This document shows positions 2,717-53,090 of a stretch of 64,000 nt of DNA, piece after piece. Position 1 is the stretch's first letter. Each line of letters starts with the position of its first letter. The position numbers and the translations under genes are program-made. The notes under the pieces were generated by a model. That model was not told the origin of the DNA. It made no database searches and was given only the letters and a program-made list of their open reading frames with translations. The stretch spans positions 28,769,917 to 28,833,916 of the forward strand of contig NC_068994.1 of NCBI RefSeq assembly GCF_001194135.2, given 5' to 3'. Source of the DNA: Octopus bimaculoides (lineage: Eukaryota).

Positions 2717-4724
2717 CATCATCATTATCATCATCGTTTAATGTCCGCTTTCCATGCTAGCATGGGTTGGACGATTTGACTTAAGACTGGCAAGCCAGAA
2801 GGCTGCACCAAGCTCCAATCTGATCTCGCAGAGTTTCTACAGCTGGATGCCCTTCCTAACGCCAACCACTCCGAGTGTGTAGTGGGTGCTTTTATGTGCC
2901 AGCGGCACAAGGGCCAGTCACATGGTACTGGCAACGGCCACGCTCAGAAAGGTGTTTTTTACATGCCACTTGCACGGGAGCCAGTCCAGNNNNNNNNNNN
3001 NNNNNNNNNNNNNNNNNNNNNNNNNNNNNNNNNNNNNNNNNNNNNNNNNNNNNNNNNNNNNNNNNNNNNNNNNNNNNNNNNNNNNNNNNNNNNNNNNNNN
3101 NNNNNNNNNNNNNNNNNNNNNNNNNNNNNNNNNNNNNNNNNNNNNNNNNNNNNNNNNNNNNNNNNNNNNNNNNNNNNNNNNNNNNNNNNNNNNNNNNNNN
3201 NNNNNNNNNNNNNNNNNNNNNNNNNNNNNNNNNNNNNNNNNNNNNNNNNNNNNNNNNNNNNNNNNNNNNNNNNNNNNNNNNNNNNNNNNNNNNNNNNNNN
3301 NNNNNNNNNNNNNNNNNNNNNNNNNNNNNNNNNNNNNNNNNNNNNNNNNNNNNNNNNNNNNNNNNNNNNNNNNNNNNNNNNNNNNNNNNNNNNNNNNNNN
3401 NNNNNNNNNNNNNNNNNNNNNNNNNNNNNNNNNNNNNNNNNNNNNNNNNNNNNNNNNNNNNNNNNNNNNNNNNNNNNNNNNNNNNNNNNNNNNNNNNNNN
3501 NNNNNNNNNNNNNNNNNNNNNNNNNNNNNNNNNNNNNNNNNNNNNNNNNNNNNNNNTGCCTCGGTGAGGCCTAAAGTTTGAAGGTCGTGCTTCACCACCT
3601 CATCCCAGGTCTTCCTGGGTCTACCTCTTCCACAGGTTCTGTCAACTACTAGGGTGTGGCACTTTTTCACACAGCTATCCTCATCCATTCTTGCCACATG
3701 TCCATACCAGCGCAATCGTCTCTCTTGCACAACACAACTGATGCTTTTTAAGTCTAACTTTTCTCTCAAGGTACTTACACTCTGTCGAGTATGCACACTG
3801 ACATTACACATCCATCGGAGCATACTGGCTTCGTTTCTTGCAAGCTTACGCATGTCCTCAGCTGTCACGGCCCATGTTTCACTGCCACGTAACATGGCTG
3901 TTCGTACACATGCATCATACAATCTGCCTTTTACTCTGAGTGAGAGACCCTTTGTCACCAGCAGAGGTAAGCGCTCTCTAAACTTTGCCCAGGCTATTCT
4001 TATTCTAGCAGCTACACTTTCAGTGCACCCTCCCCAGTTACAAACTTCGTCACCTAGGTAGCGGAAGCTATCAACTACTTCTAGTTTATCTCCCTGGAGT
4101 GTAGCAAAGGTTGTTTTCTGCACATTTTCAGTGTTAATTGCTCCTGAGCATCTGCTACATACAAAAACTATTTTGCTAGTTAGCATTCCTTTGATATTGC
4201 TGCACCTCTTATGTGTCCATAGCTTACACTGGGTACATCTTATGGAGTTTCCACCTACGCCTTTTCTACAGATTGAGCAGTGCCATCTACCTGAAGGAGT
4301 TTGTGTTTTGTCTATCTTCCTACTTATTAGGACTTTGGTTTTAGCTAGGTTGCCTCTCAGGCCCTTCGATTCTAGTCCTTGCTTCCACAGCTGATCTTCT
4401 CCACTAGTTCTGATAGTGACTCAGCAATTAGTGCAAGATCATCAGCATAGAGGAGCTCCCAAGGGCATCCCGTCTTGAATTCCTATGTTATTGGCTGGAG
4501 GACTATGATAAATAGGAGGGGGCTGAGTACTGAACCTTGGTGGACCCCTACCTCTACCCGGAATTCTTCACTGTACTCATTGCTAACCCTCACCTTACTG
4601 ACAGCGTCCCTGTACATCTATCCCTAGTTTCCTCATTGACCACCAGATAAGGGAGCGGGGGACCCTGTCAAAGGCTTTCTCCATGTCAACGAAAGCTAGG
4701 TACAGAGGTTTATCTTTGGCTAGG
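2716..4724 (-). mobile_element. RTE-clade LINE, 5'-truncated (RT, Cys-rich insert, C-terminus, 3'UTR, (CAT)n tail); interrupted by an N gap
   Basis: Minus strand reads FVDMEKAFDRVPR, VGVHQGSVLSPLLF, LLYADDL, VVDSFRYLG, RLRWYGHVARM and GRGRPRKTW. The tail aaagcggacattaaacgatgatg abuts (TA)n at ~2716. Confidence 0.93.
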
Positions 4725-9659: not shown

Positions 9660-12610
9660 AAGCTTATCTCATCTCATCTAGGTCATCCCGTAGGACGCCC
9701 CAAAACTGTTTCCACACATTTTCCCCATTCATCTCGATCTTCCATAATGGTCCTCAGCTCCTGTACCCCTTCCATACCAGTATCCTCCAGCAAGTTGTCG
9801 CTACAGGTCATCTTCCTCCTTCCTTCCTTGGTTCTTCCTTCTGTTGGTTGCCAGAGCACTAGCTTGTTAGCAATTTCATCAGCGTGTCTGATGCAGTGTC
9901 CAGCTATGCTGTATCTTCAATGTTACTTTTGGTAGTCCCTGGTATAAGTCGGTGTTTGTTGTATGACTCTTCCAGGAGACATTGAGTACCATTCTAAGCA
10001 TCCAACTGCTTCTTCAGTGCTTTAGTGAACATTCATGTTTCAGCCCCGTATAGAACAGACTCTATTGTTGCCAGAAATAACCTCATTTTCAATTTCCTTG
10101 CTAACTTTGAACTCCATACCTTTCTCAATTTATAGCATGCACTCCAGGCAAGAGCTTTCCTTGCTACGATGTCTTTTTCAGTACTTTGTGTCCACACACC
10201 AAGGTATTTGAAATTTTCAATTACTTTCAGTGACTTACTGTCTCTCACTTTCACTGACAGGCATTTCGTGATTGAATACTTGCAGCTCTGTTTTGTTTCC
10301 ATTACAGTACAATCCTACCTTCCCCGATTCCTGCTCTAATTCCGTCTCTCCATCAGGAGTGATCACTTTTGCTCTGGTGTTCTCATATAGCTTACTTATT
10401 GCTCTCAGAATTCTTGGTGGAATATCATATGCTTTAAGTATCTTCTTCATCATTCCTCTATGTACTGAATCAAAAGCCTTTTTTAAAGTCTACATAGATA
10501 ACGATAGCCTTCTTGTTATGGCTCTTAACTCCCTCTATCAATCTTCTAAGTGCAACAGTGTGAGATGTTGACTGTCCTGATCTGAATCCATTTTGATTTG
10601 GTCGCAATTGTTTGTCTATCTTATGTTGTATTCAGTTAAGTCAACTTCTGGATCCTTCCCAAGTAAGTTGTAGAAATGAGTGTACCACTTCTTGATTCTC
10701 TCATCCTTTGATTTCCCTTTGATGATTCCCTGCTTTGCAGCTTTGCAACCAGTGATAGAGCTAATCAGCCACCAGCTTTCTCCATGCTTACTCTTTGTAT
10801 CTGCATTTTCGACCTGGGAGATCACTTCATCCAGTTCTTCTTCTTGAATCTCTTGGTACACCTGTTTTAGACCCTCTTTCTTTCTTTGTAAAGTTGGTTT
10901 AGTACCATTGTTGGCAACTTTTTGATAGTTGCTGAAAGCCTCTTGTACTTCACTGCATGCTTTTTCTACCCTAGCATCATCAGCTAACTGTCTCCGTTTC
11001 ATCCTCTTCTTTATCAGTATCAGTTCTGCTGCCGCTTCTTCATTTAATTGGCATAAACTTGCAATATTGCTCTGTAACAGTATCCCTGTTGTTCTGCTGC
11101 CGCTTCTTCATTTAATTGGCATAAACTTGCAATATTGCTCTGTAACAATATCCCTGTTGTTGGATAGTTCAGCCAATCTGTTATGCATTGTGACCGTATT
11201 AAGCTGTTGAAGTTCTGTATTTTGGAATGTAGACCAATTGTAGCATTTTTTCCTTGCAGGAGTTTATCTTGTACGTAGACTAAAACATAGTCTGGCTGTC
11301 ACTAAGTGATGGTCACCCCCTAAGCTGCTTAAGCTGTTATATGCTTCTACATTGTGTACAGAATTCTTCCTTTTCTTATTAATTAGAATGTAATCAATTT
11401 GGGACCTGCTACCATTCATGTCGGAGATAAATGTCCATTGTTTTCCTTTCTTTTTCTTGAATAAAGTGTTAGTGATGTGAAGATTACATTCTGTTGCATG
11501 ATTCAGGAGAAGCTGGCCATTCTTGTCGGTCTCTTTATGGAATGTGTAGCATCAAAATCACCGCATTCTATGGTAACATGGTATTTTGGTATTTCATTGA
11601 TGACATTTGTCAGTGTTTCATAGTGCTCCTCTGCATCCTTGCTTCCCTCTGTGGGTGCATAGTTAATAACTACTGTGGTGGATGGGTTTCCATTGAACGT
11701 GGCTGTGACTATTCTGTCATTTACTGGTATTACTTCAGCCTATGCTTTCTCTGCCAAACTGTTGATTACTAATCCTACCCCTCCTGCTGCAGCACCATTA
11801 GTACTTCTCCATGCACTTGTTATTAGTGTGCAGCCTTCAAGTTGTTCAATGAGAGTAGGTCTTCTTCATGCACTATCTTGTGTTCAACTACTCCAAGGAT
11901 GTTTAGTTTGCATTTGTTAAAGTTATTAGCCATCTCCAAATGTTGCTCTTTTCCTTAAGCATTCTGACATTAAGTGTTCCAATTTTCAGGTACCTTTTAC
12001 TGTTCATAAGTTTAATTCCTCTGTTCTCGCCATCAGCTACTTCCAGTTGGATTTAAAGTAGTACCTTCATCAATCTTTATGCGACTTTCTTGAACATCTG
12101 GAATGTCTGAGTCAGGGGCTCTAACCCTAGTGCTGTTAACGTGTGGATTCATAGAGGTGTCAGTTGCACATATTATAGGAGTCATAGGGTGCTGCTTCAT
12201 GTGGTCCTGCAGTTTCCATCTAAATAGGAATATTAGGATCTCATCCATTGTCTTGTATTCAAGATCCCCTGCATGACATCCTGCTAGTTCAAAGCCAGGA
12301 ATCTGATCTGTTAGGTCCTGCCAATAACTAAATCCATGCCCTGCTGCTGACACTTCGATTTATTGTCATTAAGGTTTTGTCTGTCTCCTACCCTTTGATC
12401 TGTCTGGCCTGGTAAGACCTGCCTGAAGATTTCTCTCCCTCCAGCATAGCTCTCTGGGTCAATGGAGCACATAAGCACTTCACCGCGACAAGGTACTTGT
12501 TGAACTGGCCTTTGATTACACAGTAGTTCTTCTGCCCTTTGACAAGTCTTATTTTTCGTCCTGCAGGGTGTCCTACAATCACTCTCCTCACCAGTTACCA
12601 GTAGCACTCA
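9660..12610 (-). mobile_element. RTE-clade LINE relic (endonuclease and RT, internal deletion)
   Basis: Minus strand gives KLKIGTLNVRML, ECGDFDA, RSQIDYILI, KKAFDSVHR, ENFKYLGVW and SVLYGAET. A short (GATGA)n tail lies at ~9665-9680. Many stops. Confidence 0.85.
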
Positions 12611-27590: not shown

Positions 27591-30422
27591 TGTTGGAAGT
27601 TAAGTTGGTAAATAACTAGAGACAGTTACATAGACAAATAATGTATCAATATAATATATAGATATCATTGACACTAATATATCTAGAAATTAGTAGTTAG
27701 AAAGATAGATGAATAAACAGGTTAACAGATAGATTTAGGTTGAAAGATTTAAGCTGATAAAATATATATTTATCAACATCAACAGATGTCTTGGGATGAA
27801 GGCTGATAGATATAAAACTGTGACTGTAAATATATAGTCTGCTGTTTAACTGATATTACTATAATGCATACTCACAGCTTATTATGAGAGAAGGGAGAAA
27901 AGAGAACAATATATAAAAAAAAATTGATATTTTATTAAAAGTGTTAAGTCAAATTCATGAGTGCATGACTGCATGCATGGTGCAAGGTTTTTATCATTTT
28001 ACAAGGACATTTTGGCTGCAATGTACCTGTTAATTGCAGGATAAGGTCAACAGCAGCAGACATCATACTTTAAACTCAATGAACTGCAGTTCTGGAATAT
28101 CTCATATGTAACTAATCTAAACTCCATTTAAGCAAGTAATAGCGTTAGATGTAGCAGCAGCAGTAGTAGTAGTATAGCCAAAACTAGATATTTTATAGAA
28201 CACAACTGGAAGGTATTTGTGAGTTGAATCCATAATTAGTTAGTGATTGTTTCATTTCACTTCTATTTGGTTGCTAATGCCTTTCATAGAATTAACATTG
28301 CACTGTTTCATTCCCTGATCTCTGTAAATCTGAGGTATGTGAATAATTAAGAAGTTATTGTTTTTGTTATTATTTATAGTAGTGTTGTGGTTGATGGCAT
28401 AGCACAGCAATGAATACTTGTTTTCTGACTTTGCCTACTTTACTAAAGCCCTTAAAAAAGTTATGAACAACACAATATCACCTTCCATATTCTCTTCTCT
28501 ACATGATTAAGAGATCGTGTTTAATTAAGAAAATTCTTTCATCATTAGATCGCCATCATCATCATCATTATTATTATTATTCTTATTCTTTAAGAATTTG
28601 TGTAAATGTGTGAATTTGCAGAAGCTGTCAACCCATGGCTATAGTGTGGAGAAGATAAATGTAAAAACAGGAATATATAAATGGAAATAAAACATTACAG
28701 TTGTTAACCGTAGGGTCAATAAAATTGCAAAATAAACACCCTACTGTCATTGTTGTTACCATCATCATCATCATCAACAATAACATCATCATCATCAATC
28801 AGAACTGGCTTAGCTATTTTTTTACAGTCATTTGATGTAAACCTGTTGCACTCAAACTCACTAACTCCCCGTCTTTTTACCTCACAAGTAATCTCACTCA
28901 TACTCAGATGCAAAAGTCACACGGGTAACTGTGTGACTTTCACATGCTCATTCATATAGACTGTTCCATAGAACATTTTCAATGTAAAGACATACTCATG
29001 CTGCACAATCTCCTGCTCATACACATTTGAAGAAAACACAGACAGACTCTCTCTTACACTACAGACTCAATGATATAAACGCCAGTCTCTGAAAAGAAGA
29101 TTTCGTTACATTTAACCCTGATTACCCACATTCTTCAGTCTATGAGGACATGAAAAGCTACAAGTACTTCCCTACTTGTTTTAGACTAACTAACAGTTAA
29201 AGAAAAAAAAAAAGATAGTAAAAAGAAACAGCTACCCATAGTTTCAGTTTGGAAAAAATTATTTCACAAATTATTTCTGTAAATATCGATACTTCATAGA
29301 CATATATATGTAATCAACATGGATATATCCACTTGATTGTGTTGGGAATTACAAGTCAGTTGATATTTAGTAATTGATGAAAGGTGGTGGCTCTTCTCAT
29401 GTTTGCATTGCATAGACGTTGGAGGCCAGTCTCATCATTTATATCATCTATTAAAAATAATCTGTCATAACTTCTACAATCCTTAATTATTTTTAAATAT
29501 TAATTTGATATTTATTGTGTTAAGTTAAAGGAGTGGGGGCAGGCAGGTCACATCGAACTCATCTTTTTCAATTTGCTATCTCATTCATATCATAGACATC
29601 AGAAAACATAAATACACACACACACACACCCATGCAGAGAAATTGAGAGAGAGAGAGAGAGAGAGAGAATGGGAAGTTAACAGAAAAATAAGTAATGAAA
29701 CCAATATTTATGAGCCCAAATGATTTATTCATGAAGAAGGGCATGATTTTTCTAGTTTCTGTTGTATTAAAAAGCTCTTTTTGATCTATTCCTGGATAGA
29801 AGGCTAGTCTGTTGCTGGCTAATTTCACTGCTATCACCATCAGCAGACTCTTTAAGTGGTGCCTGTTTTATCCATTCTACTGAAAAAGTTTGACAAAATA
29901 CAAACCAAAAAAAAAATAATAAAAGGGCATGATGAAGTAAATAGTTTAGGTGGATATAGCTTAATTATGTTAGATGTAAATGAGGTGTTTTTGATATTGA
30001 CCTAATATCACTTCCTGCATTCATAGACCAGCTGCACTAAGCACCCACTTTAAAAAGTATATGTGCAAAATATATAACAAGGGGAGATCTGCAGAAGATA
30101 GTGAATTGGTTCCAGTATTTAAGTTATTCTCTTCAGCCTGGTGAGTTTTTTTTTTCATTCCAACAATGGACTGCAAGAGACTTCTGCTGCATCAAGACAA
30201 CAATAAATCAATGTTATAGAATTTGGATGTTAACTCTTTACAAGATTGCTCTTCACAATTTGCTTTGGTTTTTGATTTTTTATATGCCTATTTTTGGAGC
30301 ATATACATACATCAGTACACTTTTTACACTGACAACTATTTGTAATATACCTTAAATGAATTTAAATACAGATATTTATATACAGCTATAAGTATATGTT
30401 TATATGTATATATATACACATT

Positions 30423-30455
<33 letters not shown>

Positions 30456-30534
30456 ATTTTCAAAATTCCATTCTAACCCTCCAAAACAAATTTTTCATTA
30501 TCTCCCTTCTCTTTCTTGACCAATCTACATTCAG

Positions 30535-30549
30535 TGCAAACTGATCATA
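30535..30549 (+). promoter_or_regulatory. Exon start upstream of the zinc-finger ATG (acceptor AG at 30533-30534)
   Basis: Pyrimidine tract tctcccttctctttcttgacc...ttcAG, then 15 in-frame nt to the ATG. Candidate upstream donor CTG|GTGAGT at 30140/30141. Confidence 0.55.
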
Positions 30550-32004
30550 ATGGAAAAATCTTTCACATGTGAAATTTGTCAAAAGACATTCACCCGTCGA
30601 TCAAACTTGACCCGACATGTCTCAAACTGTCACAGAGACAGAGAAGTAGTAGAAAAATCAGAGAACAATGTCAGCATGGAAGAAACCAACGACGTCAGCT
30701 TGAGCAACAGCCCAATGGGTGTATTTTCCTGTAACATATGCCTACAAGGCTTTACCTTGAACTCTCAACTTCAAGCTCATGCTCGGGAACATGAGGCAGA
30801 AAGTGGTGTCAGTAGTGAGAACATAAATTCAGTTGCTAATACTGATACAAAAAGTGACGAAGTCAGTTCTAGTGTCGAGAGTCTTGGAATGGTGAACCCT
30901 TCTATTAGCCCAATTATTACTACTGATAACAATAATTTGAATAATGGTCCTGATGTTGCTTCTTCAGAAGTTGTTGTCACCACAGATGTGTTAAATCATG
31001 ATGTCACTTCTCCAGTTATGGTTGTCAATGGTGTTGTACGTGGTGATACTACTGTTACTCCCAGTCTAATCAACGAAACTATAAATACCACCACCACCTC
31101 CACCACTGTCTCAGCTATATCTCCCTCACCATCTCTTTTGGTTCGTCACTCAAGTCCTTACTCCTGCTCTATTTGTCAACGAGGCTTCTCCCAGCGATCA
31201 CATCTTGACGCACATGTTCGCATACACTCGGGAGAGCGGCCCTACCAGTGTAACCAGTGCGGGGCAGCCTTCTCTCGAAGAGGTAACTTGGTGCGTCATC
31301 GGCTGTCTCATGGAGGTGAACGAAAACACAAGTGTACTGTGTGTGGACGGAGATTCTCGCAAAAGTCACATCTTCAAGTCCATTTACGGATACACACTGG
31401 TGAACGACCTTACAAGTGTGACCGTTGTGGTTATGCCTTTTCTCGCAATGGTAATCTCGTCCGGCATCGACGAGCCAACAGCAGCGGCAAGCGTAAATAC
31501 AGTTGTGTGCCTCCCACATTGCTGTCAACATCAAGTGGACAACAGTCAACATCAAGCACATCTTCATCGCAAGCTGCTCTCATATCTATGTGCCAAAATA
31601 ATTTGGCACAGACACAAATACAAACTAAAAATGTGGTGAGTGGTTCAAGTCAGAAGGGAGTGAAGACCCATGTTGGTAACAGTGCTGAAGGCAAGAATGC
31701 AGCAGCCTTACATCAGCAACAATTACTGCAAACCACTTCCAATACAACTACCACCACTGCAGTGGTAGCAACAGCACCAACTGCTGCAAGCACCAATGTG
31801 GTTCAATTAGCAAATGTCCCCTATCAAATAATGACAGCTCTCCCAAGTCCCCTAAATGCCATTCAGCCAGTGACTAGTTACCACTCCCTGGCTAATGTCC
31901 CCCATCAGCTAGTCACTGTTCCACAACCAATTAGTGTCCACCAACTGGCCAGTCTAGGTAATATTGCCAGCATCCCTCTTCACATTGATGTACCAACAAC
32001 ATAA
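30550..32004 (+). CDS. C2H2 zinc-finger protein, 484 aa: two isolated N-terminal fingers, a four-finger cluster (last finger lacks the second His) and a Q/T/S-rich C-terminus
   Basis: Uninterrupted 1455-nt ORF. CxxC-x12-H-x3/4-H motifs at aa ~7, ~61 and ~206-312; SGERPY and TGERPY linkers. Confidence 0.95.
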   Translation: MEKSFTCEICQKTFTRRSNLTRHVSNCHRDREVVEKSENNVSMEETNDVSLSNSPMGVFSCNICLQGFTLNSQLQAHAREHEAESGVSSENINSVANTDTKSDEVSSSVESLGMVNPSISPIITTDNNNLNNGPDVASSEVVVTTDVLNHDVTSPVMVVNGVVRGDTTVTPSLINETINTTTTSTTVSAISPSPSLLVRHSSPYSCSICQRGFSQRSHLDAHVRIHSGERPYQCNQCGAAFSRRGNLVRHRLSHGGERKHKCTVCGRRFSQKSHLQVHLRIHTGERPYKCDRCGYAFSRNGNLVRHRRANSSGKRKYSCVPPTLLSTSSGQQSTSSTSSSQAALISMCQNNLAQTQIQTKNVVSGSSQKGVKTHVGNSAEGKNAAALHQQQLLQTTSNTTTTTAVVATAPTAASTNVVQLANVPYQIMTALPSPLNAIQPVTSYHSLANVPHQLVTVPQPISVHQLASLGNIASIPLHIDVPTT

Positions 32005-44391: not shown

Positions 44392-44631
44392 NNNNNNNNN
44401 NNNNNNNNNNNNNNNNNNNNNNNNNNNNNNNNNNNNNNNNNNNNNNNNNNNNNNNNNNNNNNNNNNNNNNNNNNNNNNNNNNNNNNNNNNNNNNNNNNNN
44501 NNNNNNNNNNNNNNNNNNNNNNNNNNNNNNNNNNNNNNNNNNNNNNNNNNNNNNNNNNNNNNNNNNNNNNNNNNNNNNNNNNNNNNNNNNNNNNNNNNNN
44601 NNNNNNNNNNNNNNNNNNNNNNNNNNNNNNN

Positions 44632-46171: not shown

Positions 46172-47688
46172 NNNNNNNNNNNNNNNNNNNNNNNNNNNNN
46201 NNNNNNNNNNNNNNNNNNNNNNNNNNNNNNNNNNNNNNNNNNNNNNNNNNNNNNNNNNNNNNNNNNNNNNNNNNNNNNNNNNNNNNNNNNNNNNNNNNNN
46301 NNNNNNNNNNNNNNNNNNNNNNNNNNNNNNNNNNNNNNNNNNNNNNNNNNNNNNNNNNNNNNNNNNNNNNNNNNNNNNNNNNNNNNNNNNNNNNNNNNNN
46401 NNNNNNNNNNNNNNNNNNNNNNNNNNNNNNNNNNNNNNNNNNNNNNNNNNNNNNNNNNNNNNNNNNNNNNNNNNNNNNNNNNNNNNNNNNNNNNNNNNNN
46501 NNNNNNNNNNNNNNNNNNNNNNNNNNNNNNNNNNNNNNNNNNNNNNNNNNNNNNNNNNNNNNNNNNNNNNNNNNNNNNNNNNNNNNNNNNNNNNNNNNNN
46601 NNNNNNNNNNNNNNNNNNNNNNNNNNNNNNNNNNNNNNNNNNNNNNNNNNNNNNNNNNNNNNNNNNNNNNNNNNNNNNNNNNNNNNNNNNNNNNNNNNNN
46701 NNNNNNNNNNNNNNNNNNNNNNNNNNNNNNNNNNNNNNNNNNNNNNNNNNNNNNNNNNNNNNNNNNNNNNNNNNNNNNNNNNNNNNNNNNNNNNNNNNNN
46801 NNNNNNNNNNNNNNNNNNNNNNNNNNNNNNNNNNNNNNNNNNNNNNNNNNNNNNNNNNNNNNNNNNNNNNNNNNNNNNNNNNNNNNNNNNNNNNNNNNNN
46901 NNNNNNNNNNNNNNNNNNNNNNNNNNNNNNNNNNNNNNNNNNNNNNNNNNNNNNNNNNNNNNNNNNNNNNNNNNNNNNNNNNNNNNNNNNNNNNNNNNNN
47001 NNNNNNNNNNNNNNNNNNNNNNNNNNNNNNNNNNNNNNNNNNATATATATGCCAACCTCAACAGGGATCTTCTCTGCCCATCTCTGTGCCAGCTTCTAGA
47101 GCCAGAGGTGGTTTTCACAGCTGAATGCTTTGCTTTAATATAGACCACTCAACCATGAAGTGGGATTGCTAAATATTTTCTTTCTTTTTTCTACTTCATT
47201 GATGAGGCAGGTGGAATAATCGCCTCCCCAAAAGACAGATTAATACCTTTGTCAAGTTTTGAGTTCAACTCCTGCAGACCAGCACCTTAGTCATTTCAGC
47301 CATTGTGCAGCATATACCCAATTCAGGTTGTTATATTATTTATATGTGTAAACATTGTATTAAATATTTCAGCATGGATAATTGTATATACTGTCTATAA
47401 CATTTAAACATGATTTGAGCATTATATTTCAAATACAGCTTGCACTGTTAAGTCATACCCTCCATCAGCTGTTGATTAGAGATAACAATTTCAGCACCTA
47501 TAAGCTACATCACTGCTTCAAGCATTAATGAGCAGTATTTGATGCTACCAGAGAATGTCTGAGTTATTTTGGTCCTCACCTCAGCATGGTCTGTTCCCTT
47601 CCTCTTATCCATGTATCTACTAAAATCACTTTTAATCACTCCAATATGACCGCAGCCACTTGGCTGAAACACATAAATAAAAAAATAA

Positions 47689-49439: not shown

Positions 49440-52400
49440 ATATAGAGACAAAAAGTGACAACATGAAAAACAAGCAAAAAGAAAAATTATAGTGAGATAG
49501 GAGACCCCAACTTAAAAGACTGCAAAATTGAAAGACATTGTGAGAGACAGAAGTGGTAAGTCATTACAATTTTGTAAAGACTGTAACTGAGAAAAATATT
49601 TATTTGAAATTTTATGGAAAAAATTATGGACACAAAGAATGAAGTGGTGGAGACATGCATGGCACCAATATAGAATAAAGTATGCTACATCAGCCGTGGA
49701 ACATGAAGCGCAACTGTTAAAGTGCAGTTTCAAATGACTGACATAGAAAAGGAAGTATCAACAAAGACACTAAAAACAACGAAATTATGCTGCTACCCAC
49801 ATAGAATGGTGCAGAATGGCGAAAGTCATGGTAGAAGATATACCAGTTGGTTATGAAGTGATGTGGGTAGCAGCGGCAGTCATATATGACGTTGAAGAAG
49901 TATCCATCCTGCAAATGAAGAGGAGGGATGCTGTGAACTGGCGAGGTCAGACGATTGAGATGGTAATTCAAGCGGCAAACCAAACTCTGAAAAATTTACC
50001 CAATAGAGTGTTTGTGGGGTAGGGGCTGACAATGTGAGTGGCTGTGAAGGGACGTAGGCCCAGATGCTTCAAGTGTGGAGAGAAGGGCCACGTCTGCTCC
50101 AAGTGTACCAAAAAGAAAAATAAGAATGAGGCCCCTCCCCCCAAAAAACATCAGCAGACAGACCAGAAAGTGCAGCAGAAGGGAAGAAGGAGAGAACAAC
50201 GGAAGAAAAGAACCAAACTACCAAGGAGATGGAGTTTACAACAGTGACTCATAAGCGTAAGAAGGCACGGACAGACGTTAGGTATGCAAAAATAAACAAG
50301 AAACTGTTTACGGATATGAAGGCGAGGTATCCGGAAGACATAAGAGACATAACCGCCAAAGTGGCAGAGGGTAAACATATTATAAGCCCAACTGCCACAC
50401 CCAGGAAAAGGACGGGGAAATAGGCGAATTTGTACAGCCCCTCCCCAAACTGAAAATGTGAGTAATCTCTTTCCTTTTATTTTTCAAAAATGATTAAGTT
50501 AGGCTGCATAAATGTGCATGGACTGGGGTTGAAATGGAAACAGGCTTGTTTTCTGGACAACCTCAAGACAAGTGATATAGATGTAGCAGTCTCAACTGTG
50601 TCCAAGATGAGTGGATCACAAGTGTTCTCTCCTCTTCTGAATGACTGAGAAAATTATTTCTCCTAGCTGACAAGGAGTGGGAGGTGTGGTGGTCTTATTC
50701 AGGAAGAACTTGAACCCAGAGGATAGGCTGGTCGTCCTGGATGTAACTCACGAAAGTAAACAGTTCTTCAGGCTGGTAGCTGTGTACGCTCCTAACAAGC
50801 ATGGGCAGTCGGGTTTTTTCCAAGACCTGGAGCACTTTCTAGTGACATCTAAAATGGTAGTTCTGTTAGGAGATTTTAACACTATACTCAATACATGGGT
50901 AGATAGTGTTGGCTCGATTGATAGGAAAGGAAATCCTGGCCTCAAGGGTCTACTAGAGAGCTATAATCTAGTAAGCCGTTACAGACTGGATGAGCCGTTT
51001 GTTCCACAGTAGATGTGGAGTAATAACGATGGCTCTCACAGATCTTACATAGATAGGATATTCATTAGAGGTAGAGATAAGACTACTTTTAGTTGTCCAT
51101 AATTTGATATAGTACCTTATACGGATCACAAATTTGTGATGTGTGAGGTACACTTAGATAAATGTCATAGACAGGAATCCGGGTACTGGAAGATGAACAA
51201 GTCTATTTTGACTTGTAAACCCTTCCATGCCCGGATTAAGGAGTTAATACAGAGGGCACTATATGGTGCCATCATTAATAATAGATGGTGGCATGCCCTC
51301 AAGAGAGCCATTTGTTTAGAGTCTATTAGATTTAGCTATCAGCTAAGTTTATATAGATCTAGAATAGAGGGTGAATTAGTTAAGAACTTAGACGAGGCCT
51401 TGGAATCTGGCTCTGCATCTAGAGTGCTGGTGGTGAGAACGGTCTTGTACTGTCACCTCAACACCAAGCACGAAGGCTGCAGAGCTAGAGCTATGCTACA
51501 TGCCGTGGGACGAGAAGGTATTAATGATGCTGGTTGGGCACGTCGTGTGGAGAGTCAGAAGGGTAAAAAAGCCTCTATAAAGTCTTTAACAGATGAACAG
51601 GGGCGCAAGATCTATGGACAGGATGAGATGCAAAAGACCTTTCATCAGCATTTCACACGGTTGTTCGGGCAGGATGGTGCACTAGAGTGTGGGGAGACCC
51701 TAAAGGGCTTCCTCGCCAGCGGGCCACGACTCTCGGCATGGAAGGCGAGGTGCTGTGAAGGGCTGATTACAGCTGCGGAGGTCAAAGAGGCGTTGGCCGA
51801 GTACACTGGGGGAAAGTCGCCGGGGCTGGATGGTCTACCCTATGAGTTTTATTGTAGCATGCCAGACTTGTTTGGGGACCTGCTGGCCAGCGTCTACACA
51901 AACTGGCAACAGGATGGGAGAATTCCCAGCTCTGTGAATCAGGGAGTGGTGACGCTGATCCAAAAGAACTCGAGCAAGGGGGATATTATAAGTAATTACA
52001 GGCCCGTAACTCTACTCAGTGTAGAGTTAGAGGTTTTGGCCAAGGTGTTAGCTAAAAGGTTGACACGTGTCATGGAGAAACTTGTAGGGAAGCCGTGCCA
52101 TCCCAGGCAGGTCGATCCAGGACAATCTTCACCTTATCTGCTACACTTTAGACAGATTGGGTAAATTAACCGGCAAAGGTGAGGCATTGGTCCATTTAAA
52201 CCAAAGTAAAGTGTTTAGTAGGGTAGACCATCAGTACCTGGTGGCAATCCTTGAAGCGGCTGGGCTGGGTCCTGACTTCTGTGGTTGGATCTTTGCCATG
52301 TATAGCAGCATCAAATCCATAGTCCAAATAAATGGCTACCTGTCGAAGCCATTTCCGATCAAACATTCAGTTCATCAAGGGTGTCCCCTGCCTCTGCTTC

Positions 52401-53090
52401 TGTATGTGGTGTGTGTTGGCTCTTGAACCATTACTGCAGAAGTTGGAGAATTTTGTGGGGCACCCACCAATGAAATCAGTTGCAGTAAGTCTGTCTCTGC
52501 TTACGCGAATGATGTCCAATGAGGCTCAGCTATCTTGTGTAGAGGAGGCTATCAGAGGATACAAGGTGGTGGCAGGAGCAAAAGTTAACAAGGACAAGTC
52601 CATCAGTTTGCACCTCAGCACCTGGAGGAGCAAGTTGATATCGTACAGTGTCATGGGTCACTCGACAGATAGTTCTGTTAAGTTGCTTGGAGTTTGGTTT
52701 GGACCGGACTCCCAGACAGAGAAGAATTGGAGCAAGGTAGCAGACAGGGTGGAGGCCCTTGTCCGGAAGGTCACTGTCCCTGAAAGGAAGGGCGGAGGTG
52801 CTACAGAGGTTTATTGCATCTGTAATCACCTACCACCTGACCGTTGTCCCTTGCTCTGACACGTGGCTGAACAAGTTGGAGCAACTCCACTTCTGCATAT
52901 TGTGAAAGGGAGGAAAGCCATTTGTGAGGTGCTCTGTTTGCTGCCAGGAACCACTAAAGGGTGGGTTAGGGATGCCCTGGTTGATGATGTGCAGACATGA
53001 GTTGAGGCTGAGGCACCTCTGGTGCTACCTGTAGGGTGATAAGGTGTGGAACCTGCTGGCAGAGGATCTCTTTCCGTGACCAGCCTCTTT
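49440..53090 (+). mobile_element. L1/Tx1-clade LINE relic (ORF1 with CCHC; ORF2 endonuclease and RT)
   Basis: PRCFKCGEKGH, KLGCINVHGL, VAVYAPN, LLGDFN, SYIDRIF, TDHK, GYWKMN, KSPGLDGLPYEFY, NYRPVTLL, HQGCPL. Many stops and frameshifts. Confidence 0.92.

What the first reader, a model, noticed from the sequence alone, without database searches (positions are those of the whole stretch)
30550..32004. Zinc-finger protein with alternating helices predicting a (GA)n microsatellite reader (GAGA-factor/CLAMP-like by convergence)
Seen: helices (-1 to +6) of the cluster are F3 QRSHLDA, F4 RRGNLVR, F5 QKSHLQV, F6 RNGNLVR, i.e. a duplicated two-finger unit; F1 is RRSNLTR. Known: the engineered modules RSDNLVR bind GAG and QLAHLRA bind AGA, and fingers bind antiparallel to DNA. 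Inference: F6-F5-F4-F3 reads GAG-AGA-GAG-AGA = (GA)6. With isolated N-terminal fingers and a Q/T-rich tail, the layout parallels Drosophila GAF and CLAMP, which use GA repeats for chromatin opening and dosage compensation. In a microsatellite-saturated genome this could turn (GA)n tracts into regulatory elements.
Basis: partly seen in the sequence, partly recalled or inferred. Interest (0 to 1): 0.78.

Follow-up and report, generated by a model that had tools for sequence, protein, structure and literature searches.

The report
Octopus zinc-finger gene, predicted GA-repeat reader
This is a real, conserved cephalopod-only zinc-finger transcription factor gene whose DNA-reading residues predict binding to GA-rich DNA such as (GA)n microsatellites. 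That binding is only a prediction from the sequence, and the gene is not related to the fly GA-binding proteins GAF or CLAMP.

Summary
Window 30550-32004 (+) is an intact 484-aa ORF with six C2H2 fingers, and the quoted helices are exact.

- **Origin.** The window is Octopus bimaculoides chromosome CM046614.1.
- **Selection.** The gene is under purifying selection: dN/dS is 0.12 against O. sinensis and O. vulgaris, with no amino-acid change in any finger.
- **Orthologues.** One-to-one orthologues exist in cuttlefish and another decapodiform. They keep F4-F6 helices identical; F3 differs only at +5 and +6.
- **Recognition code.** The standard code gives 5'-GAG-nGA-GAG-nGA-3'. All 75 matches in the window lie inside pure (GA)n tracts, against 0.04 expected.
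- **Paralogue.** An octopus paralogue repeats the same alternating finger pair in three four-finger blocks; ten of its eleven fingers fit.

- F6 lacks its second zinc-binding His. It has a conserved His-x12-Cys instead, and its fold is uncertain.
- The 5' base of the nGA triplets is weakly specified.
- F2's reading residues are not conserved.
- GA is the rarest of the three dinucleotide repeat classes present here.

There is no BTB domain and no specific similarity to GAF or the CLAMP N-terminal finger. The resemblance is functional analogy at most.

No binding or expression data exist. Verdict: a new, uncharacterised member of a known kind, with a testable but unproven GA-repeat prediction.

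The parts
30550..32004 (+). Complete single-exon CDS of a 484-aa C2H2 zinc-finger protein (stop codon included).
   Evidence: ORF found. Same CDS annotated in O. bimaculoides GCA_001194135.2. Orthologous 490-aa CDS in O. sinensis and O. vulgaris. dN/dS 0.12.
30562..30633 (+). Finger F1 (aa 5-28), helix RRSNLTR. It ends H-x3-C-H, so it could be C2H2 or C2HC. It is present in octopuses and absent from decapodiform orthologues.
   Evidence: It matches the Pfam C2HC BIRD-IDD model and CTCF's last finger. No F1-like sequence within 6 kb upstream in Sepia pharaonis. AF2 pLDDT 78-87.
30724..30792 (+). Finger F2 (aa 59-81), helix LNSQLQA. The framework is conserved across coleoids but the base-reading residues are not (ESAELEA in Sepia).
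   Evidence: AF2 pLDDT about 73.
31159..31227 (+). Finger F3 (aa 204-226), helix QRSHLDA. Code prediction nGA, with A favoured.
   Evidence: QRSHLET in decapodiforms.
31243..31311 (+). Finger F4 (aa 232-254), helix RRGNLVR. Code prediction GAG.
   Evidence: Identical in all orthologues.
31327..31395 (+). Finger F5 (aa 260-282), helix QKSHLQV. Code prediction nGA.
   Evidence: Identical in all orthologues.
31411..31506 (+). Finger F6 plus extension (aa 288-319), helix RNGNLVR. The second His is missing. A conserved basic extension ends in Cys319, giving C-x2-C-x12-H-x12-C.
   Evidence: The same H-x12-C spacing occurs in Sepia and in paralogue P0029. AF2 folds it in the fragment model but not in the full-length model.
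31507..31794 (+). S/T/Q/A-rich, poorly conserved, predicted disordered region (aa 320-415). It is a candidate activation region.
   Evidence: Composition. pLDDT below 30. Q/V/A/P-rich in Sepia.
31795..32001 (+). Conserved C-terminal tail (aa 416-484): VQL..VPYQxM..VPHQLVTVPQ..PLHIDxPTT. No homologue outside cephalopods.
   Evidence: Alignment. A profile search of 1.84 billion representatives found only the cephalopod cluster plus one spurious repeat protein. 0 non-synonymous and 2 synonymous changes between octopus species.
30141..30534 (+). Putative 5'-UTR intron: donor CCTG|GTGAGT at 30140/30141, polypyrimidine tract plus cag| acceptor at 30532-30534. It contains a (TA)n microsatellite.
   Evidence: Read from the sequence. 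The region is 96% identical to O. sinensis. In-frame stops at 30120 and 30517 make ATG 30550 the first start. This is an inference with no transcript evidence.
29645..29668 (+). (GA)12 tract about 880 bp upstream of the start codon, next to a (CA)8 tract. It is a candidate self-target only if the binding prediction holds.
   Evidence: The tract is present at the same place but shorter in O. sinensis. One tract within 1 kb is not unusual at 9 tracts per 64 kb.

Best explanation
This is a functional, solitary, single-coding-exon gene for a sequence-specific C2H2 transcription factor restricted, as far as could be tested, to coleoid cephalopods.

Its canonically linked finger array F3-F5, with F6 if that degenerate finger folds, docks in the major groove antiparallel to the purine strand. 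It reads 5'-(GAG)-nGA-GAG-nGA-3'. The R-type fingers (Arg-1, Asn+3, Arg+6) read GAG. The Q-type fingers (Gln-1, His+3, small residue at +6) read nGA with a weak preference for A.

In this AT-rich, repeat-rich genome such sites are almost only (GA)n.(TC)n microsatellites, so these are its most likely targets. The disordered S/T/Q-rich region and the conserved C-terminal motif would recruit cofactors. F1 (octopus-only, also GAG-type) and F2 (reading residues not conserved) are auxiliary or protein-binding.

Shown here: gene integrity, selection, orthology, conservation of the reading residues, and the distribution of matching sites. Inferred: DNA binding, GA specificity, and any regulatory outcome.
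For: 1. Real gene under constraint. dN/dS is 0.12 with dS 0.06. All 8 replacements and the indels lie outside the fingers and the tail. The CDS is about 98% identical, against 87-95% for the flanks.
2. One-to-one orthologues in O. sinensis, O. vulgaris, Sepia and another decapodiform keep F3-F6 about 90% identical while the linkers diverge.
3. Reading positions are the most conserved. In this protein, its Sepia orthologue and paralogue P0029, the Q-type fingers have Q-1 9/9, S+2 8/9 and H+3 9/9. The R-type fingers have R-1 8/9, G+2 8/9, N+3 9/9 and R+6 9/9. Positions +1 and +5 vary freely.
4. The linkers are SGERP, GGERK and TGERP, all of canonical length. Canonical linkage is a hallmark of DNA-binding arrays (PMC3668361).
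5. Code support: AGA=QLAHLRA and GAG=RSDNLVR (PMC7317221). Arg-1 to G and Asn+3 to A are well defined. GAF's own finger reads GAG with Asn+3 and Arg+6 (1YUI sequence; contacts from my knowledge of Omichinski 1997).
6. The best sequence and structure matches are DNA-bound arrays. Aart, the designed ANN reader, is top in Foldseek.
7. Site counts in the window: GAGNGAGAGNGA has 75 matches, all in 7 pure GA tracts, with 0.04 expected. The three-finger subsites are 91/98 and 88/91 inside GA tracts.
8. A random two-finger unit has roughly a 0.3-1% chance of specifying a dinucleotide-repeat hexamer (my arithmetic: 12 of 4096 hexamers, times 4 for one free base).
Against: - No binding assay, no trained specificity predictor and no expression data were available.
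- Simple one-to-one codes are known to fail in context (PMC4330361).
- The 5' base of both Q-type triplets rests on Ala/Val (Thr in Sepia F3) and is weakly specified, so GAGTGA-type or GAGGGA-type sites are equally allowed by the code.
- The R-type fingers have Gly rather than Asp at +2, which normally buttresses Arg-1.
- F6 lacks its last His. AF2 folds it in a 135-aa fragment (pLDDT about 80) but not in the full-length model (pLDDT below 50 from residue 286).
- The F4-F5 linker lacks the usual Pro.
- GA tracts are the rarest of the three dinucleotide microsatellite classes found here.
- The conservation count in item 3 is partly circular, because fingers were sorted into types by two of the scored positions. 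However, those two types cover all cluster fingers but one.
Confidence: 0.5

Rival explanations
1. It is a sequence-specific transcription factor, but its true site is a unique, non-repetitive motif. That motif might be GA-containing, such as GAGTGAGAGGGA, or quite different. GA microsatellites would then be at most incidental low-value sites.
For: The 5' base of the Q-type triplets is unspecified by the code. Context dependence of simple codes is documented (PMC4330361). F6 is degenerate. The Sepia F3 +6 residue differs, Thr against Ala. Non-repeat three-finger matches do exist in the window, 7 and 3 of them.
Against: Strict conservation of the alternating Q/H and R/N/R pattern across orthologues and across the paralogue's blocks (ten of its eleven fingers) points to a periodic target. 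No non-repeat 12-mer match exists in 64 kb.
Confidence: 0.3
2. It is a repeat-silencing or transposon-silencing zinc-finger protein, functionally like vertebrate KRAB-ZNFs. It would target a GA-rich element and act as a repressor rather than a GAF/CLAMP-like activator or chromatin opener.
For: Cephalopod C2H2 genes are massively expanded, about 1,450 in O. bimaculoides. A link to repeats has been proposed but is untested (PMC12513265). The window is full of transposon debris.
Against: The gene is solitary and not in a tandem ZNF cluster. It is one-to-one across coleoids with near-invariant reading residues, the opposite of arms-race turnover. Pfam detects no repressor domain. Most cephalopod repeats are lineage-specific.
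Confidence: 0.08
3. The fingers mainly bind RNA or proteins, and the protein is not a DNA-sequence reader.
For: C2H2 fingers can be protein-binding modules; CLAMP's N-terminal finger is an example (PMC9226498). F2's reading residues are not conserved. Weak Pfam matches to zf-met/jaz-type models occur at F1. Most of the protein is predicted disordered.
Against: F3-F6 have canonical-length TGEKP-like linkers. The region carries strong positive charge, 25 K+R against 5 D+E in 120 aa. The base-contacting positions are conserved. The best matches are DNA-bound arrays.
Confidence: 0.07
4. It is a chance or decaying ORF that is not expressed.
For: No transcript evidence could be obtained. The Sepia Logan contigs are colinear with genomic DNA, so they do not prove expression.
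Against: It is the longest uninterrupted ORF without assembly-gap residues in the 64-kb window. dN/dS is 0.12. The reading frame is intact in five species spanning the octopus-cuttlefish split. Both Met1 and Met43 have a good start-codon context, read from the sequence.
Confidence: 0.02

Closest known systems
Drosophila GAGA factor (GAF/Trl), DNA-binding domain PDB 1YUI/1YUJ
   Same: Both use a C2H2 finger in which Asn+3 and Arg+6 read the A and the 5' G of GAG. GAF's helix is QSRNLRR; F1, F4 and F6 here are R..N..R. Both have a Q-containing low-complexity region. The predicted targets are GA repeats.
   Different: GAF has an N-terminal BTB/POZ domain and a single finger helped by two basic regions, and reads a 5-bp GAGAG. 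This protein has no BTB and a four-finger array. Its similarity to GAF is only generic C2H2 similarity: 37% over 27 aa, best to F1. It is not a family member.
Drosophila CLAMP (CG1832)
   Same: Both are multi-finger C2H2 proteins with isolated N-terminal finger(s), a low-complexity region and a C-terminal tandem array. CLAMP binds long GA-rich motifs: a 15-bp motif with an 8-bp core, and four C-terminal fingers suffice for weaker binding (PMC4945028).
   Different: CLAMP has six tandem fingers at its C-terminus and a poly-Q stretch between the N-terminal finger and the array. It is conserved in insects. Here there are four fingers followed by 165 further residues. The N-terminal fingers show no specific match to CLAMP's N-terminal finger (7NF9 is absent from the 60 PDB hits shown, of 245). 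CLAMP's C-terminal helices could not be compared because no sequence was to hand.
C. elegans EOR-1/PLZF
   Same: It is a C2H2 protein bound in vivo to a dimeric GAGA motif and linked to chromatin accessibility (PMC5741055). It shows that GA-reading zinc-finger factors have arisen in several phyla.
   Different: EOR-1 has a BTB/POZ domain and belongs to the PLZF family. Pfam detects no such domain here.
Engineered Barbas modules and the designed six-finger protein Aart (PDB 2I13)
   Same: The modules are QLAHLRA=AGA and RSDNLVR=GAG (PMC7317221). F3 and F5 share Gln-1, His+3 and Leu+4 with the AGA module, and F3 also shares Ala+6. F4 and F6 share Arg-1, Asn+3, Leu+4, Val+5 and Arg+6 with the GAG module. 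Aart is the top structural match and a top sequence match.
   Different: The natural fingers have Gly rather than Asp at +2 in the GAG-type fingers, and Val/Thr as well as Ala at +6 in the AGA-type fingers. Module behaviour in a foreign framework is not guaranteed.
Octopus vulgaris 'finger 665-like' (P0029), a paralogue
   Same: It has three four-finger blocks built from the same Q-type/R-type pair. Examples are QRSHVSV/RLQNLER/QRSHLKA/RNGNLAR. Its last finger ends with the same H-x12-C basic extension, RHRRGNKKKGKRWSC.
   Different: It is 687 aa, with eleven intact fingers plus one degenerate finger, a different N-terminus and a different C-terminal tail. One block has GAA-type and GC-type fingers in place of GAG-type ones.

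Membership tests
Classical C2H2 zinc-finger proteins (Pfam PF00096) | Repeated C-x2-4-C-x12-H-x3-5-H fingers scoring above the Pfam threshold. | tested here: met
   PF00096 at E 6.2e-34, 114.9 bits against a cut-off of 25.2, with six stretches. Five fingers are fully canonical; F6 lacks the last His.
Classical C2H2 zinc-finger proteins (DNA-binding arrays) | Tandem fingers joined by TGEKP-like linkers of canonical length. | tested here: met
   The F3-F4 linker is SGERP, F4-F5 is GGERK and F5-F6 is TGERP, all 5 residues. The Pro is missing in the middle linker.
GAGA factor (Trl/GAF) | N-terminal BTB/POZ domain. | tested here: not met
   The Pfam scan of the whole ORF at E<=1 shows mostly zinc-finger families and no BTB among the 25 families listed. 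In-frame stops upstream (30517; 30120 in the putative 5' exon) leave no room for an upstream coding exon in frame.
GAGA factor (Trl/GAF) | Single C2H2 finger flanked by basic regions BR1/BR2 that complete GAGAG recognition. | tested here: not met
   There are six fingers. BLASTP against the 1YUI domain aligns only the finger core (37% over 27 aa) and not the basic regions.
CLAMP | Six tandem C-terminal C2H2 fingers forming the DNA-binding domain (PMC4945028). | tested here: not met
   The cluster has four fingers and is followed by 165 more residues.
CLAMP | Conserved N-terminal finger (PDB 7NF9) that binds partner proteins. | tested here: inconclusive
   phmmer of aa 1-90 against all PDB sequences at E<=10 gave 245 hits. 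The 60 shown are generic fingers and 7NF9 is not among them. A direct pairwise test was not possible without the sequence.
CLAMP | Sequence similarity of the C-terminal finger helices to CLAMP's. | not tested
EOR-1/PLZF (BTB-ZF) | BTB/POZ domain plus a C-terminal finger array. | tested here: not met
   No BTB.
Lineage-specific tandem C2H2 expansions of coleoids (PMC12513265) | Membership in a tandem cluster of recent paralogues with species-specific copy number. | tested here: not met
   There is no other finger array in the 64-kb window. One-to-one orthologues exist across octopus and decapodiform lineages. Placement in the published tree was not tested.

The most novel reading that the evidence does not exclude
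Coleoid cephalopods evolved a small family of zinc-finger proteins of their own, unrelated to GAF, CLAMP or EOR-1. The family comprises this gene and the multi-block paralogue P0029. It is built from a repeated 'AGA-finger + GAG-finger' pair that reads (GA)n microsatellites in register. Tract length would set occupancy, and GA microsatellites would act as tunable regulatory or chromatin-opening elements in these repeat-rich genomes. The family's terminal finger would use an undescribed Cys2-His-x12-Cys zinc site.
Probability: 0.15. Interest if true: 0.6.

Novelty: new member of a known kind. Interest (0 to 1): 0.35.

Why it matters
About 1,450 C2H2 genes exist in O. bimaculoides and none has a known binding site. 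The authors of the latest survey name finding those sites as the next step (PMC12513265).

This gene is a favourable first case for four reasons:
- It is short.
- It has a single coding exon.
- It is conserved one-to-one across coleoids.
- Its reading residues give a simple, sharply testable prediction.

If the prediction holds, it would add a mollusc example to the independently evolved GA-repeat readers of flies, nematodes, plants and vertebrates. It would also link microsatellite length variation to gene regulation in cephalopods. If it fails, it is one more ordinary lineage-restricted zinc-finger factor.

Tried and rejected
- **Sub-region homologue searches.** Word-indexed searches with the post-finger region (aa 309-484) and with an N-terminal/F2 alignment returned nothing, not even the query's own protein or the known Sepia orthologue. 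These are uninformative, not negative.
- **Full-length homologue search.** It was swamped by vertebrate poly-zinc-finger proteins that out-score the true orthologues. Any non-cephalopod four-finger orthologue would be hidden below the 120 rows shown.
- **Tail profile search.** A search of 1.84 billion representatives found only the cephalopod cluster plus P0128, a repeat-rich protein unrelated by eye. A wider origin for the tail was therefore rejected.
- **Expression evidence.** Sepia Logan contigs L001-L004 are colinear with S. pharaonis genomic DNA and bounded by homopolymers. They do not show splicing or expression.
- **Locus of paralogue P0029.** It is not on record.
- **B1H data.** No supplementary tables of Persikov 2015 are held, so no data-driven position weight matrix could be built.
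- **Upstream coding exon (for example BTB).** Rejected because of in-frame stops.
- **RNA genes.** tRNA and Rfam scans of the window found nothing.
- **Neighbouring ORFs.** Pfam on eight of them gave only a piggyBac transposase fragment.
Full report
**What is there.**
Window 30550-32004 (+) is an uninterrupted 484-aa ORF. Pfam finds six C2H2 fingers (PF00096, E 6e-34) and no other domain type of note.

The fingers are:
- F1: aa 5-28, helix RRSNLTR.
- F2: aa 59-81, LNSQLQA.
- F3: aa 204-226, QRSHLDA.
- F4: aa 232-254, RRGNLVR.
- F5: aa 260-282, QKSHLQV.
- F6: from aa 288, RNGNLVR.

F3 and F5 are 61% identical, and F4 and F6 are 54% identical. All other finger pairs are 25-46% identical, so the 'duplicated two-finger unit' is real.

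After the first His the sequence runs RRANSSGKRKYSC, with a Cys 13 residues on.

**Where it comes from and whether it is a gene.**
The identical protein is annotated on Octopus bimaculoides chromosome CM046614.1, assembly GCA_001194135.2. A 490-aa orthologue lies at the corresponding place in O. sinensis and O. vulgaris, named only 'zinc finger protein 436-like / 287-like'.

Between O. bimaculoides and those two species dS is 0.06 and dN/dS is 0.12. The eight replacements and the indels all fall in the linkers and in the spacer just after F1. F3-F6 show 0 non-synonymous and 2-3 synonymous changes. The C-terminal tail shows 0 and 2.

The CDS is about 98% identical between species, against 87-95% for the flanks.

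Orthologues of 389-393 aa exist in Sepia/Acanthosepion and in another decapodiform.
- They lack F1. Their Met aligns with octopus Met43, and no F1-like sequence lies within 6 kb upstream in S. pharaonis.
- They keep F2's framework, F3-F6 and a 70-aa C-terminal tail.
- The helices of F4, F5 and F6 are identical. F3 is QRSHLET, so only +5 and +6 differ.
- F6 lacks its second His there too, with the same H-x12-C spacing.

The gene is therefore old, dating at least to the octopus-cuttlefish split, and constrained.

It is solitary. No other finger array lies in the 64 kb, which otherwise holds transposon debris, twelve assembly gaps and many microsatellites.

A likely 5'-UTR intron runs from 30141 to 30534, with donor CCTG|GTGAGT and a polypyrimidine tract plus cag acceptor. 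With in-frame stops at 30120 and 30517, this makes ATG 30550 the first possible start. This is inference without transcript evidence.

**How far the family reaches.**
A HMMER profile of the tail, run against 1.84 billion representative proteins, found only the cephalopod cluster and one spurious repeat protein.

The full-length search was swamped by poly-zinc-finger proteins. The two sub-region searches failed even to recover the query itself. Orthologues outside coleoids are therefore not excluded for the finger array.

One octopus paralogue, P0029 ('finger 665-like'), is informative. It has three four-finger blocks built from the same alternating pair:
- Block 1: QRSHVSV/RLQNLER/QRSHLKA/RNGNLAR.
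- Block 2: QRSHISV/QYGNMLR/QRTHLKV/RNGNLMR.
- Block 3: (degenerate)/NMNDLER/QKSHMKA/RVGNLIR.

Its last finger ends with the same H-x12-C basic extension.

Across this protein, its Sepia orthologue and P0029:
- The Q-type fingers have Gln-1 9/9, Ser+2 8/9, His+3 9/9 and a small residue (A/V/T) at +6.
- The R-type fingers have Arg-1 8/9, Gly+2 8/9, Asn+3 9/9 and Arg+6 9/9.
- Positions +1 and +5 vary freely.

The sorting into types uses two of these positions, so the count is partly circular. However, the two types cover every cluster finger but one.

**What the fingers should read.**
Arg-1 to G and Asn+3 to A are described as well-defined preferences (PMC3668361). The engineered modules are GAG=RSDNLVR and AGA=QLAHLRA (PMC7317221 Table 1).

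The GAF finger itself, whose 1YUI sequence I confirmed, has helix QSRNLRR. By my knowledge of the NMR structure it reads GAG with Asn+3 and Arg+6.

Since fingers bind antiparallel, F6-F5-F4-F3 predicts 5'-GAG-nGA-GAG-nGA-3'. The 'n' rests on Ala/Val/Thr at +6, which is a weak determinant. The neighbouring fingers carry Gly at +2, so they add no cross-strand constraint there. (GA)6 is therefore one of 16 sequences the code allows, not the only one.

In practice the distinction hardly matters here:
- All 75 matches to GAGNGAGAGNGA in the window lie in seven pure GA tracts, against 0.04 expected.
- If F6 is ignored, 91 of 98 matches to the F3-F5 site lie inside GA tracts.
- If F3 is ignored, 88 of 91 matches to the F4-F6 site lie inside GA tracts.

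The linkers have canonical length (SGERP, GGERK, TGERP). The finger region carries 25 K+R against 5 D+E. The best sequence and fold matches are DNA-bound arrays, headed in Foldseek by Aart, the designed ANN-triplet reader.

**Caveats.**
- Simple codes fail in context (PMC4330361).
- No trained predictor or binding data could be used.
- F6's competence is unclear. AlphaFold2 gives it a normal beta-beta-alpha fold in a 135-aa fragment (pLDDT about 80) but not in the full-length model (pLDDT below 50 from residue 286).
- 'Degenerate' fingers with an alternative last ligand can be genuine, as in ZNF711 Z7 and ZNF750. An H-x12-C spacing is much longer than in those cases.
- GA tracts are the rarest of the three dinucleotide microsatellite classes found in the window: 9 tracts, against 44 CA and 59 TA.
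- F2's reading residues are not conserved (LNSQLQA against ESAELEA), so F2 is unlikely to read DNA sequence.
- No evidence of expression could be obtained, because the Sepia contigs are colinear with genomic DNA.

**The rest of the protein.**
Everything outside the fingers is predicted disordered. The post-finger stretch is S/T/Q/A-rich in octopus and Q/V/A/P-rich in Sepia, which is compatible with an activation region.

The last 69 residues are conserved without any non-synonymous change between octopuses. They have no homologue elsewhere. They are best read as conserved short linear motifs for a partner protein, which is unknown.

**Comparison with known systems.**
The protein is a classical C2H2 protein.

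It is not a GAF family member. It has no BTB/POZ domain, it does not have GAF's single finger with basic regions, and the similarity is only generic finger similarity of 37% over 27 aa.

It is not a CLAMP family member by architecture. CLAMP has six tandem C-terminal fingers and an insect-conserved N-terminal finger. Here there are four clustered fingers followed by 165 more residues. The N-terminal fingers show no specific match to 7NF9 among the PDB hits shown. CLAMP's C-terminal helices could not be compared.

EOR-1/PLZF of C. elegans, another GAGA-motif binder, also has a BTB domain.

GA-reading factors have arisen repeatedly in flies, nematodes, plants and vertebrates. A mollusc one would be a new member of a known kind rather than a new kind.

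**Verdict.**
The GA-rich prediction survives the conservation test that could have refuted it and is strengthened by the paralogue. It is still a sequence-based prediction with a degenerate fourth finger and an unspecified base in every second triplet.
- The GAF/CLAMP-like biology is untested.
- I put about 0.5 on GA-rich/(GA)n binding. I put about 0.15 on a genuine microsatellite-reading regulatory system.

Noticed in passing
window 31465-31506 (aa 306-319); same feature in L001 (Sepia) and P0029: The last finger of the array replaces the usual H-x3-5-H with H-x12-C inside a conserved basic segment: RRANSSGKRKYSC here, KRANKGGKRKYSC in Sepia, RRGNKKKGKRWSC in the paralogue. It could be an unusual zinc ligand arrangement, a nuclear-localisation signal or a DNA-backbone clamp.
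   Followed up: partly
window 29614-29668: A compound (CA)8...(GA)12 microsatellite lies about 0.9 kb upstream of the start codon, just upstream of the putative 5'-UTR exon. It is present at the same place in O. sinensis, where the GA part is shorter. One such tract within 1 kb is not statistically unusual here.
   Followed up: partly
window 29700-30549: The kilobase upstream of the ATG is 96% identical to O. sinensis, higher than the more distant flanks. It contains a plausible donor (30140/30141) and acceptor (30534/30535) around a (TA)n-bearing intron.
   Followed up: partly
window 30550-30675 (aa 1-42): F1 and the N-terminal extension exist only in the octopus orthologues, and Sepia proteins start at the residue aligned with octopus Met43. 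Both Met1 and Met43 have A at -3 and G at +4, so two isoforms, with and without F1, are conceivable. F1's end (RHVSNCH) resembles C2HC fingers such as CTCF's last finger.
   Followed up: partly
P0029 (O. vulgaris 'finger 665-like', 687 aa): This paralogue has three four-finger blocks of the same alternating finger pair. By the same code nearly all of its fingers read GAG or nGA. Its genomic locus could not be retrieved.
   Followed up: partly
L009 (Sepia pharaonis CAHIKZ030000894.1), protein P0122/CAE1243979: The public cuttlefish model, named 'KRAB', replaces the conserved C-terminal tail by a long low-complexity F/L/S-rich sequence through a predicted intron. The intronless 389-aa reading seen in the Logan contigs fits the octopus protein, so the public model looks mispredicted and misnamed.
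   Followed up: partly
window 14030-14395 (-): A fragment of a piggyBac-type transposase (Pfam DDE_Tnp_1_7, E 1e-13).
   Followed up: yes
window 2918-4186 (-), 51136-52859 (+), 16318-16917 (-), 10616-11002 (-): Long ORFs that look like retrotransposon (LINE/RT) remnants by eye, for example RLRWYGHVARMDEDSCVKK. The fragments tested gave no Pfam hit at E<=0.001.
   Followed up: partly
window, 12 runs of N (e.g. 960-1371, 2990-3556, 46172-47042): There are 4,877 bases of assembly gaps, several placed inside or next to microsatellites (for example 44392-44631 inside a GA tract). Microsatellite lengths in this assembly are therefore under-estimates.
   Followed up: no
(tool behaviour): Word-indexed homologue searches with sub-regions of the protein did not return even the query's own database entry. 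Empty results from that tool for short or low-complexity queries should not be read as absence.
   Followed up: no
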